Source of the DNA: Utricularia gibba | Lineage: Eukaryota; Plantae; Magnoliophyta | Assembly: GCA_002189035.1 (NCBI GenBank) | Contig: NEEC01000008.1 | Location: forward strand, 2,790,001-2,854,000 | Direction: 5' to 3' | DNA: 64,000 bases | In this document: positions 37,841 to 47,498 of the stretch, one piece after another | How positions within the stretch are numbered: the first letter of the stretch is position 1 | Layout: the number at the start of each line of letters is the position of its first letter | Position numbers and translations under genes: made by a program | Notes under the pieces: generated by a model | The model's input: only the letters and a program-made list of their open reading frames with translations | What the model was told of the DNA's origin: nothing | Databases searched by the model: none

Positions 37841-39616
37841 ATGGGGGCGGATCGGCGGCGTTTCGAGCCGATTGCGAAATGCAGGGTCGACGGTAGGGGG
37901 AACCAGACGGTGGCGGCGGATTTGGATGGAACGCTGTTGAGATCGAGCAGTGCGTTCCCGTACTACATGCTCGTCGCGCTGGAGGCAGGAAGCGTGATTC
38001 GCGCGTTGATTCTGTTGGCGTCCGTGCCGTTTGTGTATCTCGTGTATTTGTTCCTCTCGGAGACTGTCGCGATTCAGACTCTGATTTTCGTCGCCTTCGC
38101 CGGACTGAAGGTTCGCGATATCGAGCTCGTAGCGCGATCAGTGTTGCCCAAGTTTTACGCGGAGGACGTGCACCCGGAGTCGTGGCGGGTGTTCAACTCG
38201 TTCGGGAAACGCTACATTGTGACCGCGAGCCCCAGAATCATGGTCGAGCACTTCGCGAGGAACTTCCTCGGCGCGGATAAAGTGCTCGGGACCGAATTGC
38301 AGACCACGAAATCCGGCCGCGCCACCGGATTCGTGAAATCTCCGGGAGTCCTCGTCGGCGAGTCCAAGAAATCGGCAGTTATTGCCGAATTAGGGCCCAA
38401 TTTGCCAGATTTGGGGATTGGGGATCGGGAGTCCGATCACGACTTCATGTCCCTCTGCAAGGTAAGCCTGGGATTCTGTAACGGTTTTGGGTTCAGTTCA
38501 GTTTTCCGTACCGCGCACAAAAAAACAATTTTACCGTGAGGCATATTAGTAAGAGTTGGTAGAGATTTTTAATATTCTTGGTCAAGGTATTTACTGTTCA
38601 TTGCAGGGGAAGTTCAGATTCCCATGCAGGTATCGTGGAGAAGTAGTTGAATGCCTCTGTCGATACCTGCGTTTTCCCTCTAAATGCCTACTGCTTTCTG
38701 ATGATCCTGAATTTTGGCCATTTTGCAGGAGGGGTTCATGGTCCCGAGAACCAAGGTTGAACCGCTAGCCCGAAACAAGCTGCTTTCTCCGGTGATCTTT
38801 CACGAGGGCCGCCTTGTGCAGCGCCCAACTCCGCTCGTGGCTCTCGTCACATTCCTCTGGATGCCCATAGGAATCTTCCTCTCCATCCTCAGGGTGTACC
38901 TCAACATCCCCTTGCCGGAAAAAATCGTGCGTTACAATTACATGATCCTGGGAATCAAACTGATAGTTAAAGGGAACCCGCCGCCGCCGCCGCGGCCGGG
39001 GCAGGGGGGCGTCCTCTTCGTATGCAACCACCGCACCGTCCTCGACCCAGTCGTCACCGCGGTGGCTCTGGGGCGGAAGATCAGCTGCGTCACTTACAGC
39101 ATCAGCAAATTCTCGGAAATGATTTCGCCGATCAAAGCCGTTGCACTGTCCCGGGAACGAGAACGAGACGCGGCGAACATCAAGCGTTTACTCGAGGAAG
39201 GTGACCTGGTGATCTGCCCCGAAGGAACAACCTGCAGAGAACCGTTTCTCCTCCGGTTCAGCGCCCTGTTCGCGGAACTGAGTGACCGGATCGTCCCGGT
39301 GGCGATAAGCACGAAGCAAACAGTTTTCTACGGAACCACAACTCGGGGTTACAAGGTCCTAGACCCATACTTCGTGTTCATGAATCCTCGTCCGACGTAC
39401 GAAATCACGTTCCTGAATCAGCTCCCCCCGGAATTAACCGTGGCCGGCGGTAAATCAGCGATCGAGGTGGCGAATTACATCCAGCGAGTGCTCGCCGGAA
39501 CTCTGGGCTTCGAGTGCACCAATTTGACAAGGAAAGACAAGTACGCGTTGATGGCCGGGACAGACGGCTTGGTCAAATCCAACTCCGATAAGGAAATCCT
39601 TGACAAGAAGCAGTAA
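37841..39616 (+). CDS. GPAT6: sn-2 glycerol-3-phosphate acyltransferase/phosphatase for cutin synthesis, GPAT6-like; 2 exons (37841-38461, 38729-39616), 502 aa
   Basis: HAD motif [16 protein letters not shown], acyltransferase CNHRTVLD and [16 protein letters not shown]. The two-exon structure fits GPAT6 rather than GPAT4/8. Confidence 0.93.
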
Positions 39617-40158: not shown

Positions 40159-42349
40159 TTTGCATAATAATACTTTATTATTATTATTTTTCAATATTTT
40201 TTTATTAATTTAATATTTTATCTTATTGGTAATTTATCTTTATCAATATGAGCGTAACAAATGAAATTACGATTACATTTTATTTATTTTTCAAATTGAT
40301 CCACTATAAAATATCCCATCTTACCTCTCCCATATTCATTAAAATATGGCTAGACCCTAATTAAAATATTTTAATAATAAGAGTATTATGGCTAAACCCT
40401 AATAAATTAATTGGATTTGTAGAATCAATTAATCAGTCAGGATTGTACTATGAGAAGTACACATTGAATGAGATAATCATTCTTTTCCATAATCATTTAT
40501 GTAATATAAAACTGTAATATTGTCATTTTATATCTCAAAATTAAAAAAATTAAATTAATATTAGTATTAGTATTAGTTTCTACTTTTAAAAATGAAAAAT
40601 AAGAAGTAGAAGTATCACATAAAATAGTTTTAGTCTATGTGCTGTATAATTTATATTTCTTATTTCTTTTTTAAAAGTTAATGATTTGCATAACACGACA
40701 TGTTTCTATAGATTTGTGTTAGAAATTAGAAATAGTTCTAAGTTTTTTAAGAATAATTACAGAATATTTTATTCATTTTAAATCTATTTTTCAAGAATTT
40801 TTTTTAGGATAGTTTATTTGAATAATCAAAAGACAGTCATTGTTGTTTTGGCAGTTCACATGGAACACGTGATGCCCTGGAGCCGAGTGAAGGAACTGGT
40901 CAGTAGATGATAAGGCCCACTTTTTGTATTCTTGTCTTTAATTGGCATCTAAATAAAAAAAATAAATTCATGAGCCCATGGGCGCGAAATGCCCCATTCT
41001 GCTTCTCGTTGGGCCACTTATTGTGGTCGTTTAGGCCCAATATGATTTTCTCTCCGGAGCCCCAAATTACGCGAGGCTCTAAAATCTGTCTCCTTTGTAG
41101 GGTCGCTGTCGTTGTTCGCAGAACTGGGGAAGATTGTCTTGTGATGGTGTGGTGATATTTCTTGGCTACCGGCTCGGAACGAGGGGTTTTATTAAGATTT
41201 TTTGTTCAATTTGCTGTTGATGAATGGGATTTTGGACCTGAGTTGTTGTGAATGAGAAGTTGGGAGCGTCCGTGACTGAGGTTGATGATTCCGATGAGCA
41301 ATATGTTTCCCAGAAGAAAATTGTGACAAGGACATGATTAAGGCTGGAATAGGCGAAAAAGGTACTAGGGATCTGGGATCGTAATCAGGTATGAGGGCAT
41401 GTGGATGAAACACGTTTTAATGGTGTTATTCTCCTGAGTTGTTTGAATGCATTGTTTTGAAGGTTTATCATTATGGCGTGTGTGCAGTTTTGTGAAGGTT
41501 ATACTGTATAATCCGAAAACTGGATGCCGTAGTTGTAGAGTCAACCCGAGCTAAACTCAGAGGTTCGATTAATCTTGCTCTATGATTCACATTGTCATGG
41601 GGGTACTGCCTAATTTGGGGTATCTTGTGTCTGATGGAATAGTAAATTGCGCCCCCAAAAGGATCATTTTTGTAAAAGCAAGATGATCTTGGCTTGGTGG
41701 AAGGGATGCCTACAATGAGTTGCACTGGTAATTTGTTAGAAAAACTGTCATCTATTGATCAACCACATGCTTATGATCAATCAAGTCATGATAGAAAAGG
41801 CATGAATAATGTGTAAGTTTATCCCATTCAAGTATTTCCTGACACAGTTAATCTTTGTGTCCGGTTCCCATAAGGCAATCGGAACTAGCTGATTGGGCGA
41901 GAAAGCAGCCATTTATGTCCCAAGGTAGTAGTTGGCCGTGTCCCTCGTTTGAAGGTATTTTTGAAATCCTATATGAAGTGGAGCTGGTTCACTTTGTCCA
42001 GGTGAAATTGCCATTCTGGTTATTCAAAACTCTGCTACACCAAGACTGACGTTGCCTGGAGATACAGTCCTTGATACATGCCCACCTGAATGGCTTCATT
42101 GTACGAGGCTCCTCTGGTGCTTATGGTTTAGTGGGAACTGGGAAATGAGCCTCTTTATTGCTTAATGGATTCTGTGGCAGTTCGTTTGGTGACAACAGAT
42201 TGAGCAGAAACATATTACCCTTCTGGAAACAAGTTCTGAGATTTCAGTAAAGAAACATTTTCTTCCGTTGGCATAAGTTGCCATGGACATACAGACACTC
42301 ACTGAGAGCCTCGAGAAGAACACCAAACAAAGCCTGTCAACAAAGAGTA

Positions 42350-43439: not shown

Positions 43440-45404
43440 TCACGCCTGCCTGTGCTCCTCATGCAGATCGCTCCTACTGCTTTTTACTGAAAAAACCATT
43501 TGCAAAAGTTGGTAATTCCCTGAAGAGATGGAGAGCAAGAGCAACAAGGTTTAGTGGATATTTACCAGGACTAACAACTCTAACACGTTTCGTGATGGAT
43601 CGTGTAGTGGTTATTGTTTCTGGTGCTGCAATCAAACCACCGCACTTTAGATTCAATGCTTGAGTAAGATACAGAGGGTTCAGCTGCAGATGATGCTCTT
43701 ACCAATTTCTAGTGTAGGTGTCATCATGTCCTTGCCAGCCATGGCTTCTTCTGGCAACTGGCTTGGGAAATGGGAGGCAACACTCTCGTGGTTTCCTTGT
43801 AAACTATGTGGACTGAAACTAAGGATGAAAAGGGAGCAATGTTGAGGTTAAAATGTGAGAATGTGACTAAGGAAATGGATGGAGAATTAATTACCTGGAG
43901 GAGAAATGGGGAGATGAATCCATTCCTTGGCTTGAGTTTAAACACTGCCCTTCATTTGAAACATCGAATTCAAGTAGAAGTTCAGAAAGATTGAAATCAA
44001 GTCCAAAGGCGTCCAGGCCTGAGAAGTCCAAGTCAAGAATGCTGTTTTCTCGGTCAGATTCTGAGGTAGAGTTGCCATCAGTTTGTGTCTCCATCATGGG
44101 CGTGTCTGCTGCTGAACCAAAATCTAGCCTTCCTCTAACATTATCCTTAGCAGAGTACCTCTTCAAATGAGGTGAACATGATGAGACATGACTCTTCTCA
44201 ATGGAATAATATGAGATCTGCTTCATGGGTGTCACTCTAATTGTCTCGGAGACTATTGTGCAATTGGCAGACACAACATGTGGAGAGACACCTTTAGCAG
44301 ACGTGGGAGTTGAAAGGATTTCCAAGGGTGTCCTGGATTTCTCAGTTTCGGAAGAAGAAGTGCGTGGAGGAGTTTTGGGAACAGGGGTCTGCATAGGTGG
44401 TAATGGAGCTTCTTGATGAAACAAACCCTTGACATCATTCGATCCATTTGGAACTGCTTCGTGGCTAGGTAACTGAGCTGCAGGGTGTGTATGAGGCTCG
44501 TGTTTTCCACTTTCCTTCGAGTTCGATAGCATCGTATCATCTGCAACAAGAAAATAGAGTAAGAGGGCACAGCCTGCAGTGAAAAAGCCAGTTTTGCCAA
44601 AGATTCCACCTTTGATTTGGGTGCATTTCCGAGCTCTCTTGGAAGTAATTGGAACGTCTAAGACACTTTTCTGAGCTTTCCTTCTCGTAGATTGTATAAC
44701 TGAGGTAACTGAATTGTTAGGTAACTTCTGGATATGTGAGTCCCTTGATGCAGACACCATCGTCACACCATTAAGTGCTGTACAACAGTAAAGACAGGAA
44801 AGTTAGGCAACACAAACATCGGGAAAACCCACAAGCACAATTGCAAAATATTGCAGAAAATGCAGATCAAATATTACTTGCAGGGGTCACAAACGCAGCT
44901 TCGCTCTGCGAAGCCAAGGGCCCTGTTGTTGCTTGTGGCATCGAAGGTGCGGCGAAAGAACTTCTGCCTACGAAGTCGTTTTCGGCGGCATTATAAGCAT
45001 TCATTACGCCTTGTAACCCTACCAGCAAATTGACGACCCGCAGCTTTTCCTGTTCCAAACGGCACCGTTCCTGATCTACCCACACCTTCTTCTCCTTCAA
45101 AGTTATGTATTCATCAAGAATTGCAGCTAAACTCAGCATACTCTTGGGCGCCTGAAAATTCCAAACCCAGAACATCAATGCCCAAACCCATGTCAAACCT
45201 GGTTAATTAAAAGCAAGCAAAGGGAATTACTTCGTGAACAGGAGAATTAGCAATGAGATCCGCTGCTTCGACCCGAAACGTTGAACGCGCATGGGTGTAA
45301 CCATTGTCGAGTAGATAACGATCAACGATGAAAGCTGTCTGAAGAGGAGTAACTTTCCCTTTACCCACAACGAGAGGTTTCTTCGATTTCGTCTGCTTCC
45401 CCAT
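43440..45404 (-). CDS. Uncharacterised LisH-domain protein (plant family often mislabelled myosin-M heavy protein); NPAT-like N-terminus
   Basis: LisH TAFIVDRYLLDNGYTHARSTFRVEAADL, second exon LSLAAILDEYITLK plus coiled coil, an S/T-P-rich middle, VRGRLDF, DLDFSGLDAFGLDFNLSELL and RSITKRVRVVSP. The last exon boundary is approximate. Confidence 0.85.
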
Positions 45405-45531
45405 TCCCTCTCCTCCTCCAGTTCAGAAAAGGCGAGAAGGCGAATTGGAGGGAATTCAACGACGACTACGCCTCGCGGAGGAGGGAAAAGATGCAGAAAA
45501 GAAGCGGGAGCATTTCGAATTTCTCTTTTCG

Positions 45532-45620
45532 ACGACAAGGCCCAAATTTCTTCTTTTTGGGCTGGACTACGACAAGGCCCAAATTTCTTCTTTTTGGGCT
45601 GGACTACGACAAGGCTCAAA
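45532..45620. repeat. 37-bp tandem repeat, about 2.4 copies, in the LisH/pTAC13 bidirectional promoter
   Basis: Unit ACGACAAGGCCCAAATTTCTTCTTTTTGGGCTGGACT starts at 45532, 45569 and 45606 (partial). Confidence 0.95.
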
Positions 45621-45789
45621 CGTGCTTGATCGGCCCATCATACATGGTCATGGGCCTGAAAATCTTGGGCTATATGAATTGATAAGGTGGATCGGCCCAT
45701 TAGACCAGGAAAGCCCATTTCTGGTGCATTATCCACAACCGAAACGGAAAAGGTGTTTCTGCTGGACACCTGCAATTGCGAGGGACAAG

Positions 45790-47498
45790 ATGATGATGAA
45801 TCGAGGACTGCTGTCATGGAGTCATCGTTTAGGGACCTCACAATTGTGCATTCCTTCGCATAGAGCTCGATTTCCTGGTTCCAATGAGCCTAAATTCTCA
45901 ACCATTACATTAGCGGTTAGTTCTGTGGGCGAGGAGTCGATGACCGCCCGGGAGAAAAGGCAGATGAGGAACAGTAGAAGGGAGAGCAAGCCCGCGTATA
46001 ATTGGAAGGAAGATGTTGAGATGCGCCTAATCAAGAAGACGAAGAAACGGCGAGTCTCTTGGACAGAGGAGTTAAATTTGGATAATCTCGCGTCCGCTGG
46101 CCCGCAGTGGTGGATTGTCAGAGTCTCTAGAGTTTCTGGGAGTGAGACGGCCGAGAGAATGGCTCGTGCTCTAGCCAGAAACTTCCCTCACATGGATTTC
46201 AAGGTTAGTATTGGTTTTTCATTTTAATTGCTTTGCGGCTGAGAGTGGAGAATCTGCAGTTGTTTTTTGTGATTGAAATAGCGAAAATTTATTGTTATTG
46301 TAGCTGGTGTAGGGCGTGTTTCTTGATTGCTCCATGAATACAGGTTTACATTCCTTCAGTTCAAATCAAGAAAAAGTTGAAAAATGGCTCCATTACTGTT
46401 AAGCGAAAATCAGTTTTCCCAGGATGCGTATTTCTGAGATGTGTATTGAACAAGGAGGTGCATGACTTCATTCGAGAATGTGATGGGGTAGGAGGCTTTG
46501 TTGGATCCAAGGTTGGAAATGAGTAAGAAATCTATGTTAATTTCTCCAACTCTGTTGAACTTTTGTTCTCACTCTTCGATTATTTATGAACTGGTGGAAA
46601 AAAATACATAGAAATTTCGAATTTTCCAATATTTCCGTATTTCTTATTGCAGGAAGAGGCAGATAAACAGACCTAGGCCTGTAAGTGAACATGAAGTTGA
46701 GGTCATATTTAAGCAAGCAAAAGAAGAACAGGAGAAAGAGGATTTAGCATTTGAAGAGGAACAGAAGAAGGATCTTGCGTTAGACTCCACACCTTTGTCC
46801 TCCGGTGGCATTGCAGATCTCAAGGCGATAGTGAAGCGTGGTGGGCATGGTAGGAAAACTACTTCATTGAAACTCGGATCCACTGTCCAAGTTATATCCG
46901 GACCCTTTGCCGGTTTCTCTGGCACCATCAGGAAGCTTAATAAAAAAGCAGGGGTGGTATGTTGCTCTTACTTACGTTTACTGTTTGCCTTATTGAGGAC
47001 TTACACTTAAAACTTCACCGAGGAAGCCTATGCCCCACCATGATTAGCCTTCCCCGTTTCAGATTGCAGACACATATTTCATCATATTTCCTTTTTACTC
47101 ATAATATCCTTCTACGGTGGCCATATTTTACTACCTGAGGTTGATGGTATAGGAGACTGTAGGAGCGAGAAGCTGTCAACACAGCAAGTTTTTGTAGTTG
47201 GATTTTTTCCTAGGTTGTAGGAAAGGAACAAGAGTCATAGCACGCTTAGTTTGATTTTTGGCACATCGAAGTTGCTTCAGCAGCAATCATTACTGTGTTT
47301 CACTGGATCAAACTTTTGGTGATCAATTCTGGTTTGTTTATGCAGGCGACGCTTTCACTCCTGCTGTTTGGGAAGGAAACGCTAGCTGATATTGATACAA
47401 AAGATATCTCCCCGAGACAAATAATCAAGCAACAAATGCGGTTCTTTAATACCCTTCTGCCACACTACTGCAAAAAATCAAACGTTCTCCCTCAATGA
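45790..47498 (+). CDS. PTAC13: Plastid transcriptionally active chromosome protein 13 (NusG-like), 4 exons
   Basis: GPQWWIVRVSRVSG, VYIPSV..FPGCVFLRCVLNKEVHDFIRECDGVGGFVGSKVGN (NGN domain), KOW region LKLGSTVQVISGPFAGFSG, and LFGKET. The extreme C-terminus may be affected by an indel at 47410-47413. Confidence 0.93.

What the first reader, a model, noticed from the sequence alone, without database searches (positions are those of the whole stretch)
43440..45404. Candidate plant homolog of NPAT, the histone locus body scaffold and histone gene coactivator
Seen: PLQTAFIVDRYLLDNGYTHARSTFRVEAADL...SMLSLAAILDEYITLKEKK. From memory, human NPAT begins PSDVARLVLGYLQQENLISTCQTFILESSDL...NLTTILNEYVAMKTKE. 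Both the LisH (TF..E..DL) and the following L..IL.EY...K.K helix match. The rest is disordered, with about 14 S/T-P sites including full CDK consensus TPPR and TPMK, an RxL-type cyclin docking motif (RGRLDF), an acidic-hydrophobic patch (DLDFSGLDAFGLDFNLSELL) and a basic terminal motif. That is the same logic as the CDK2-regulated NPAT/Mxc. I know of no described NPAT or histone locus body system in plants, whose histone mRNAs are polyadenylated. Inference: an S-phase nuclear condensate factor for histone or cell-cycle transcription.
Basis: partly seen in the sequence, partly recalled or inferred. Interest (0 to 1): 0.75.

Follow-up and report, generated by a model that had tools for sequence, protein, structure and literature searches.

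The report
Uncharacterised plant LisH nuclear scaffold gene
This is a real, expressed plant gene from an unstudied family found across vascular plants; its self-associating head resembles the animal histone-gene organiser NPAT, but no more than it resembles an unrelated corepressor protein (TBL1), so the NPAT link is an untested lead.

Summary
A seven-exon gene on the minus strand (45404-43440) encodes 494 aa. Spliced public contigs confirm three of its six introns. Only residues about 20-116 are predicted to fold: two LisH helices and a long helix. The rest is predicted disordered and carries conserved short motifs.

It belongs to an uncharacterised 'LisH domain-containing protein' family. 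Named members run from Selaginella, Ginkgo and Taxus to Amborella, monocots and eudicots. One source labels members 'like AT2G37960'.

NPAT homology is neither shown nor excluded:
- The plant N-terminal profile scores TBL1 at 13.9 bits. It scores a partly memory-based NPAT N-terminus at 14-18 bits, so the two are equivalent.
- TBL1 also has the post-LisH L..IL helix.
- None of 74 members matches Pfam's NPAT_C domain.
- The protein is a third of NPAT's length.
- None of the best 150 hits among 1.84 billion proteins exceeds 570 aa. Another 94 weaker hits were not shown.

The CDK-substrate idea gets modest support. S/T-P sites are enriched (13 against 7.2 expected). TPxK and SPxK sites and a KxLF motif are conserved. 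RGRLDF is not an RxL motif.

Most likely it is a self-associating nuclear co-regulator controlled by proline-directed kinases. The scan's earlier notes held nothing on this family.

The parts
43440..45404 (-). Whole coding region, seven exons: 45404-45231, 45151-44878, 44777-44610, 44540-43895, 43818-43703, 43625-43566, 43486-43440. Encodes 494 aa.
   Evidence: GT-AG at every intron. Spliced contigs confirm introns 1, 4 and 5. The homologue alignment supports the 69-nt intron 3.
45249..45353 (-). LisH-type two-helix motif, residues 18-52 (VTPLQTAFIVDRYLLDNGYTHARSTFRVEAADLIA).
   Evidence: Pfam LisH E = 0.015, below threshold. LisH_PAC1 matches 36 of 74 members, best E = 2e-4. AlphaFold2 helices on homologue P0001. 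TBL1 LisH is the best PDB match.
44981..45148 (-). Post-LisH helix with L66-x-x-I69-L70-x-E-Y, continuing as a long helix (residues 60-115). Probable oligomerisation element.
   Evidence: One helix of about 50 residues with pLDDT 92-97. Columns nearly invariant across the family.
44626..44685 (-). Basic bipartite NLS-like stretch, residues 181-200 (RRKAQKS...SKRARK).
   Evidence: Read from the sequence. Basic residues are conserved in the family consensus KRK.SK...AKRSR. A divergent legume-type paralogue group has an AT-hook (KKPRGRPPG) at residues 165-260, roughly the same region; not aligned column by column.
44419..44430 (-). K243-G-L-F, which fits the cyclin-docking pattern [RK]xL[F]. It sits in the conserved block GS.V.KCLFNQ.
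   Evidence: Regex match. K, L and F are each kept in 90% or more of 120 members.
44362..44373 (-). T262-P-P-R inside the conserved PKTPP block.
   Evidence: [ST]P kept in 118 of 120 members; R at +3 in about 40%.
44194..44265 (-). Conserved block NCTI.SETIRV-[ST]P.K-QI.YYSIE, containing T309-P-M-K.
   Evidence: [ST]P kept in 113 of 120 members; K at +3 in 90% or more.
44119..44139 (-). Conserved V.GRLDF motif of unknown role. It is not a canonical RxL motif.
   Evidence: G, R, L, D and F are each kept in 90% or more of members. No match to [RK]xL at this place.
43963..44040 (-). Acidic-hydrophobic patch ILDLDFSGLDAFGLDFNLSELLLEFD (residues 373-398). A candidate activation or binding motif, preceded by the serine-acid cluster STSESD.
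   Evidence: Conserved pattern I.DLD...LD..G.DF..SELL..FD.
43482..43602 (-). C-terminal basic motif RSITKRVRVVSPVK with S478-P-V-K; spans intron 6.
   Evidence: [ST]P kept in 100 of 120 members; K at +3 in about 80%.
45539..45717 (.). Upstream region with nine TGGGCY (site II-type) motifs, including a 37-bp tandem duplication whose copies start at 45580 and 45543.
   Evidence: 9 of the window's 52 matches fall in 179 bp, where about 0.15 would be expected. The repeat is visible.

Best explanation
The gene encodes a member of an uncharacterised 'LisH domain-containing protein' family whose named members span vascular plants; one annotation source calls members 'like AT2G37960'. Shown here: the gene is transcribed and spliced. 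Only the N-terminal 100 or so residues are predicted to fold, as a LisH two-helix motif plus a long helix. The remaining 380 or so residues are predicted disordered but carry strongly conserved short motifs. Inferred: the LisH-plus-helix head makes dimers or tetramers, as in TBL1 and as proposed for Mxc/NPAT. The basic stretch imports the protein into the nucleus. The disordered tail works as a multivalent platform, with an acidic-hydrophobic patch for partner or activation contacts. Conserved [ST]P sites and a KxLF docking motif would let cyclin-CDK or another proline-directed kinase regulate it. The most likely role is therefore a self-associating nuclear transcription or chromatin co-regulator, possibly tied to growth and proliferation. 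It works on the same general principle as NPAT, but is not demonstrably its homologue.
For: Gene model and expression. Family membership: the N-terminus is 75-90% identical across eudicots with E down to 1e-70, and the tail is 40-57% identical in Lamiales and Solanales. Named members come from Selaginella, Ginkgo, Taxus, Amborella and monocots. LisH character. Fold limited to residues about 20-116 with a disordered remainder. Conserved short motifs and S/T-P enrichment. Nuclear or chromatin role: the NLS-like stretch, and 13 representative clusters of a divergent paralogue group carrying an AT-hook. Self-association by LisH plus a downstream helix is established for TBL1 (PDB 2XTC) and Mxc (PMC4395134). 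The dense site II motif cluster upstream fits the class of plant promoters active in proliferating cells (established knowledge, not tested here).
Against: No member of the family has a published function that I could find; the only paper naming AT2G37960 uses its promoter as an endodermis/pericycle driver (PMC8004629). Oligomerisation, nuclear localisation and phosphorylation are all inferred from motifs. Short motifs such as KxLF and [ST]Px[KR] arise easily by chance; their conservation argues for some function but not for a specific kinase. The site II cluster lies beside a plus-strand ORF (45445-46227) with no Pfam match, and may serve a divergent neighbour if there is one. The LisH matches are individually below Pfam's thresholds.
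Confidence: 0.6

Rival explanations
1. The family is the plant orthologue, or a direct functional counterpart, of NPAT/Mxc: a CDK-regulated LisH-SIF scaffold that forms nuclear bodies and activates replication-dependent histone genes in S phase.
For: The LisH sits at the extreme N-terminus. An L..I[IL].E motif lies 36 residues after the VxxYL core, against 41 in Mxc, where L58/I61/I62 (GGLEEIICE) are needed for HLB assembly and are conserved in human NPAT (PMC4395134). The plant profile aligns a composite NPAT N-terminus through both elements at 14-18 bits, a per-sequence E of about 1e-6 to 1e-7. Conserved [ST]Px[KR] sites and KxLF are present. AT-hook paralogues recall Mxc's AT-hook. How plants coordinate their dispersed histone genes remains an open question (PMC13525598).
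Against: TBL1 scores the same (13.9 bits) and also matches the helix, so the similarity is not NPAT-specific. The real NPAT exon alone scores only 4.5-6.2 bits; the rest of the composite rests on recollected sequence. No NPAT_C match in 74 members. The protein is a third of NPAT's length. No protein longer than 570 aa is in the best 150 hits. All named members are vascular plants, with no intermediates seen in algae, bryophytes or other eukaryotes. AT2G37960 is absent from the held, possibly truncated supplementary files of one Arabidopsis root cell-cycle study.
Confidence: 0.07
2. It is a TBL1/HOS15-style adaptor: the LisH tetramerisation head scaffolds a corepressor or histone deacetylase complex, and the tail recruits targets.
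For: TBL1's tetramerisation domain is the best match both by sequence profile (E = 0.42) and by Foldseek (probability 0.41, 28% identity over 72 columns). The match covers both the LisH and the following helix.
Against: Neither match is significant. There is no F-box-like region and no WD40 propeller. From general knowledge, plants already have a TBL1 orthologue, HOS15. The acidic-hydrophobic patch looks more like an activation motif than a repression motif.
Confidence: 0.12
3. It is a cytoskeletal or centrosome-type LisH scaffold like TONNEAU1/FOP, with the coiled coil acting in microtubule organisation.
For: LisH plus coiled coil is a common design in such proteins. The structure searches returned only generic coiled coils.
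Against: There is a conserved NLS-like stretch, AT-hook paralogues and an acidic activation-like patch. FOP- and LIS1-type LisH chains did not appear in the PDB profile search at E up to 10.
Confidence: 0.06

Closest known systems
Plant 'LisH domain-containing protein' family (annotated 'like AT2G37960'; otherwise uncharacterised/hypothetical)
   Same: Full-length collinear homology. It has the N-terminal GKGKVTP.Q.AFIVDRYL...LDEYI.LKEQK head, the basic stretch, and the motifs GS.V.KCLFNQ, PKTPP, NCTI.SETIRV[ST]P.KQI.YYSIE, V.GRLDF, STSES, the acidic DLD...DF..SELL..FD patch and a C-terminal SP.K.
   Different: The tail is unusually diverged: only 49-57% identical to the closest Lamiales members. 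Several minor S/T-P sites are specific to this lineage.
NPAT (human) / Mxc (Drosophila), scaffold of the histone locus body
   Same: N-terminal LisH, a downstream helix with L..I[IL], a long disordered region with proline-directed phosphosites, and nuclear-protein features. It plausibly works on the same principle: a self-associating head with a multivalent tail.
   Different: No significant or family-specific sequence homology. No NPAT_C domain. A third of the length. No metazoan-type relative was recovered. Any link to histone genes is untested.
TBL1X/TBL1XR1 N-terminal tetramerisation domain (PDB 2XTC/2XTD); from general knowledge the plant orthologue is HOS15
   Same: Best solved-structure match by sequence and by fold; it covers the LisH and the following L.SIL helix.
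   Different: No F-box-like region and no WD40 propeller. The matches are not significant (E = 0.42 and 0.54).

Membership tests
NPAT/Mxc | LisH motif at the extreme N-terminus | tested here: met
   Pfam LisH E = 0.015 on exon 1, below threshold. LisH_PAC1 or LisH matched in 36 and 6 of 74 members. Two helices in the AlphaFold2 models.
NPAT/Mxc | SIF region: a helical L..II/L..IL motif about 40 residues after the LisH VxxYL core (Mxc L58/I61/I62, PMC4395134) | tested here: inconclusive
   L66..I69-L70 lies 36 residues after Y30 and is invariant in the family. TBL1 has an equivalent L.SIL helix that aligns equally well.
NPAT/Mxc | Sequence similarity to the NPAT N-terminus above that to other LisH families | tested here: inconclusive
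   Composite NPAT 14-18 bits against TBL1 13.9 bits. Part of the composite is recollected sequence; only residues about 12-52 were checked against database fragments.
NPAT/Mxc | C-terminal NPAT_C domain (Pfam PF15712) | tested here: not met
   NPAT_C is not among the 20 families matched by any of 74 family members at E up to 1, nor by five members at E up to 10.
NPAT/Mxc | Large protein: Mxc 1837 aa (PMC4395134); human NPAT about 1427 aa (from memory) | tested here: not met
   494 aa here. The listed family hits reach at most 570 aa.
NPAT/Mxc | Cyclin E/CDK2 substrate | not testable with these tools
   At the motif level only: conserved TPxK, SPxK, TPP[RQ] and KxLF.
NPAT/Mxc | Concentrates at histone genes and activates their transcription | not testable with these tools
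   No localisation or expression data were available. AT2G37960 is not found in the held supplements of one cell-cycle single-cell study.
Plant AT2G37960-like LisH family | Conserved N-terminal head (about residues 14-112) | tested here: met
   The window's translated exons 1-2 align with Lamiales members without gaps and nearly residue for residue. The head itself is 75-93% identical among eudicot members, E down to 1e-70.
Plant AT2G37960-like LisH family | Collinear conserved tail motifs | tested here: met
TBL1/TBLR1/HOS15 | F-box-like region and a C-terminal WD40 propeller | tested here: not met
   No WD40 match. The tail is predicted disordered.

The most novel reading that the evidence does not exclude
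Vascular plants have a compact counterpart of NPAT/Mxc, either an orthologue too diverged to recognise or a convergent analogue. In this reading a LisH-plus-helix head builds a nuclear condensate, and cyclin-CDK phosphorylation of the conserved TPxK/SPxK sites, docked through KxLF, switches on S-phase transcription of the dispersed, polyadenylated plant histone genes.
Probability: 0.07. Interest if true: 0.85.

Novelty: new member of a known kind. Interest (0 to 1): 0.4.

Why it matters
How plants coordinate S-phase expression of dispersed histone genes without a known histone locus body is an open question (PMC13525598). A conserved, unstudied nuclear LisH scaffold with cell-cycle-kinase motifs is a cheap candidate to test in Arabidopsis. 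Apart from NPAT, the family is one of the few plant LisH families with no assigned function. Its named members span vascular plants, and it has an unusually well-conserved head and a set of conserved linear motifs, so it is probably a real regulatory hub. On present evidence, though, it is an ordinary uncharacterised gene and the NPAT link is speculative.

Tried and rejected
- Pfam on exon translations and on 74 homologues gave only sub-threshold LisH matches.
- The PDB profile search gave TBL1 at E = 0.42. The other hits (ribosomal uS10, gyrase A, E2F4) look like chance coiled-coil matches.
- Foldseek against the PDB gave TBL1 at probability 0.41. The ESM Atlas fold search and VIA-align returned only generic long helices and coiled coils and say nothing either way.
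- The Atlas feature search scored below 0.8, which is chance level.
- The profile search of 1.84 billion representatives lists only the best 150 of 244 hits, all 570 aa or shorter. The 94 weaker hits could not be inspected.
- To get real NPAT sequence I used a 44-aa bait: 31 aa from the finding plus 13 from my own memory. It returned four short unnamed exon fragments that confirm residues about 12-52, but they stop at an intron before the second helix. I did not fetch their contigs because they are mammal-like and one (P0294) could be human. P0294 was not used further.
- Literature: no paper links NPAT to plants. The only paper naming AT2G37960 uses its promoter. Supplements of two cell-cycle papers gave nothing. 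PMC164767 and the supplements of PMC4395134 are not held.
- My first gene model used the acceptor at 43812; the RNA contigs overruled it.
- RGRLDF as an RxL cyclin-docking motif: rejected.

Full report
GENE MODEL AND EXPRESSION. The finding lies on the minus strand. ORF listing and direct reading give a seven-exon model with GT-AG at every intron: 45404-45231, 45151-44878, 44777-44610, 44540-43895, 43818-43703, 43625-43566 and 43486-43440. No listed run is on record as RNA, but four small runs of the same species label yielded contigs that skip 45151-45230, 43819-43894 and 43626-43702. The gene is therefore transcribed and spliced. Those contigs also corrected my first choice of acceptor for intron 4, from 43812 to 43818, which adds two residues and gives 494 aa. 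The 69-nt, in-frame intron 44609-44541 has no contig coverage. It is supported because all 14 aligned homologues lack the 23 residues it would encode.

THE FAMILY. The long central exon finds 46 proteins at E down to 2e-64, all from Lamiales, Solanales and Convolvulaceae. They are named hypothetical, uncharacterised or 'LisH domain-containing protein', and identity is only 37-63%. The N-terminal 120 residues of the Sesamum member P0001 find 287 proteins and are 72-93% identical across eudicots. Three Hibiscus entries are annotated 'like AT2G37960'. A profile of residues 12-114 searched against 1.84 billion representative proteins finds 244 proteins at E up to 0.001. The 150 listed are all 570 aa or shorter. 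Name look-ups place members in Selaginella, Ginkgo, Taxus, Amborella, Aristolochia and several monocots. The named members therefore span vascular plants, and I found no published function. The one paper naming AT2G37960 uses its promoter as an endodermis/pericycle driver (PMC8004629). I did not verify the orthology to AT2G37960 myself.

ARCHITECTURE. AlphaFold2 on the head (19 sequences) gives helices 9-22, 26-42 and 50-102 of the fragment, with pLDDT 84-97 on the long helix. AlphaFold2 on full-length P0001 (74 sequences) folds only helices 20-33, 37-52 and 66-116; everything else has pLDDT below 50. This confirms 'the rest is disordered', with the caveat that the model is of a homologue, because the spliced window protein has no reference. 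Pfam gives only sub-threshold LisH matches: E = 0.015 on exon 1, LisH_PAC1 in 36 of 74 members (best 2e-4) and LisH in 6. A 121-sequence alignment shows the tail is not featureless. Its conserved blocks are:
- a basic stretch (181-200);
- GS.V.KCLFNQ (239-248);
- PKTPP (260-264);
- NCTI.SETIRV[ST]P.KQI.YYSIE (298-320);
- SSP.LKR;
- V.GRLDF (340-346);
- STSES;
- an acidic-hydrophobic patch (373-398);
- a C-terminal RS.TK....SP.K.

PHOSPHORYLATION MOTIFS. There are 15 S/T-P sites. Thirteen are in the tail, against 7.2 +/- 2.2 in composition-matched shuffles (p = 0.013). There are three [ST]Px[KR] sites against 0.72 expected (p = 0.03). Seven sites are kept in 82% or more of 120 members: T19, S54, T262, T276, T309, S328 and S478. 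The +3 lysine is conserved at T309 and S478; the +3 arginine at T262 is kept in only about 40%. RGRLDF does not fit [RK]xL. K243-x-L-F does, and is kept in 90% or more of members. This is modest, motif-level support for regulation by a cyclin-CDK or another proline-directed kinase.

TESTING NPAT HOMOLOGY. No paper in the library links NPAT or a histone locus body to plants. Terzo et al. (PMC4395134) define the Mxc head as LisH residues 6-38 with V14/Y17/L18, plus a SIF region whose L58/I61/I62 (GGLEEIICE) are conserved in human NPAT. They also modelled the Mxc LisH on TBL1X (2XTC). The plant protein has V27/Y30/L31 and L66/I69/L70, so the pattern fits, with a spacing of 36 against 41 residues. 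TBL1 fits as well. The plant profile's best PDB match is the TBL1 tetramerisation domain (13.9 bits, E = 0.42). That alignment runs from the LisH through '...PPAALISILQKGLQYVE'. Foldseek's best hit is the same domain. No other solved LisH protein appeared at E up to 10.

NPAT itself is not in the PDB by sequence. To obtain real NPAT sequence I used a 44-aa bait, 31 aa quoted in the finding plus 13 from my own memory. It returned four unnamed exon fragments that confirm LGYLQQENL[T]STCQ[TA]FILESS[DN]LKEYAEHCTDEGFIPACLL, but they end at an intron before the second helix. It scores 14-18 bits against the plant profiles and aligns through both elements; the confirmed exon alone scores 4.5-6.2 bits. 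So NPAT and TBL1 are equally near. The similarity is that of a LisH-plus-third-helix module and is not specific to NPAT.

Other defining NPAT features fail. There is no NPAT_C match in 74 members. The protein has 494 aa against 1837 for Mxc (PMC4395134) and about 1427 for human NPAT (from memory). No long protein is among the listed hits. The 94 unlisted weak hits, and a proper profile-profile comparison, remain open. I could not run them because no tool could supply full NPAT or Mxc sequences.

MOST LIKELY FUNCTION. By analogy with TBL1 and Mxc, the head should self-associate. This is inferred. The basic stretch and the AT-hook (KKPRGRPPG) found in 13 representative clusters of a divergent paralogue group, four of them traced to legumes, point to a nuclear, chromatin-proximal role. 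The acidic-hydrophobic patch looks like an activation or partner-binding motif. The conserved [ST]P and KxLF motifs suggest kinase control. Upstream, nine TGGGCY site II-type motifs lie in 179 bp (45539-45717), against about 0.15 expected from the window's density, and part of this comes from a 37-bp tandem duplication. From general knowledge, such clusters mark plant promoters bound by TCP factors and active in proliferating tissue. The region sits beside a plus-strand ORF with no Pfam match, however, and may serve a divergent neighbour. My best reading is a self-associating nuclear co-regulator under proline-directed kinase control (confidence about 0.6). I put a true NPAT counterpart at about 0.07, a TBL1-like corepressor adaptor at about 0.12, and a cytoskeletal LisH scaffold at about 0.06.

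VERDICT. The gene is a new member of a known but uncharacterised plant family. Interest is moderate, as a cheap, testable lead on an open question.

Noticed in passing
window 45539-45717: Nine TGGGCY (site II-type) motifs lie in 179 bp just upstream of the gene. They include a 37-bp tandem duplication (GGGCCTTGTCGTAGTCCAGCCCAAAAAGAAGAAATTT, copies starting at 45580 and 45543 on the minus strand). A smaller cluster of four lies at 40914-41039.
   Followed up: partly
window 43812-43818: Two AG acceptors lie 6 nt apart at the start of exon 5 (ccttag|tttcag|). The one spliced contig covering the junction uses the upstream one (43818), which adds Ser-Phe. Alternative use of 43812 is possible but was not seen.
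   Followed up: partly
P0173, P0180, P0193, P0212, P0214, P0216, P0219, P0230, P0234, P0252, P0282, P0283: A divergent, shorter paralogue group (213-439 aa) keeps the LisH-helix head but lacks the KxLF and GRLDF motifs. It carries an AT-hook (KKPRGRPPGRK) at residues 165-260, roughly where the main family has its basic stretch. The four members that were traced come from legumes (Glycine soja, Phaseolus coccineus, Flemingia macrophylla) or have no organism on record.
   Followed up: partly
window 44081-44109: One spliced contig (run X3) differs from the window by two substitutions and an in-frame CAT insertion after 44091. It is probably another accession or allele of the same species label.
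   Followed up: no
window 37841-39616 (+): A glycerol-3-phosphate acyltransferase gene of the RAM2/GPAT type, with a HAD-like N-domain (E = 6e-60) and an acyltransferase domain (E = 8e-10), in two ORF pieces.
   Followed up: partly
window 45445-46227 (+): A long plus-strand ORF runs away from the same upstream region. It has no Pfam match, and its last part (…QWWIVRVSRVSG…) may be the first exon of a divergent neighbour gene. Not resolved.
   Followed up: no
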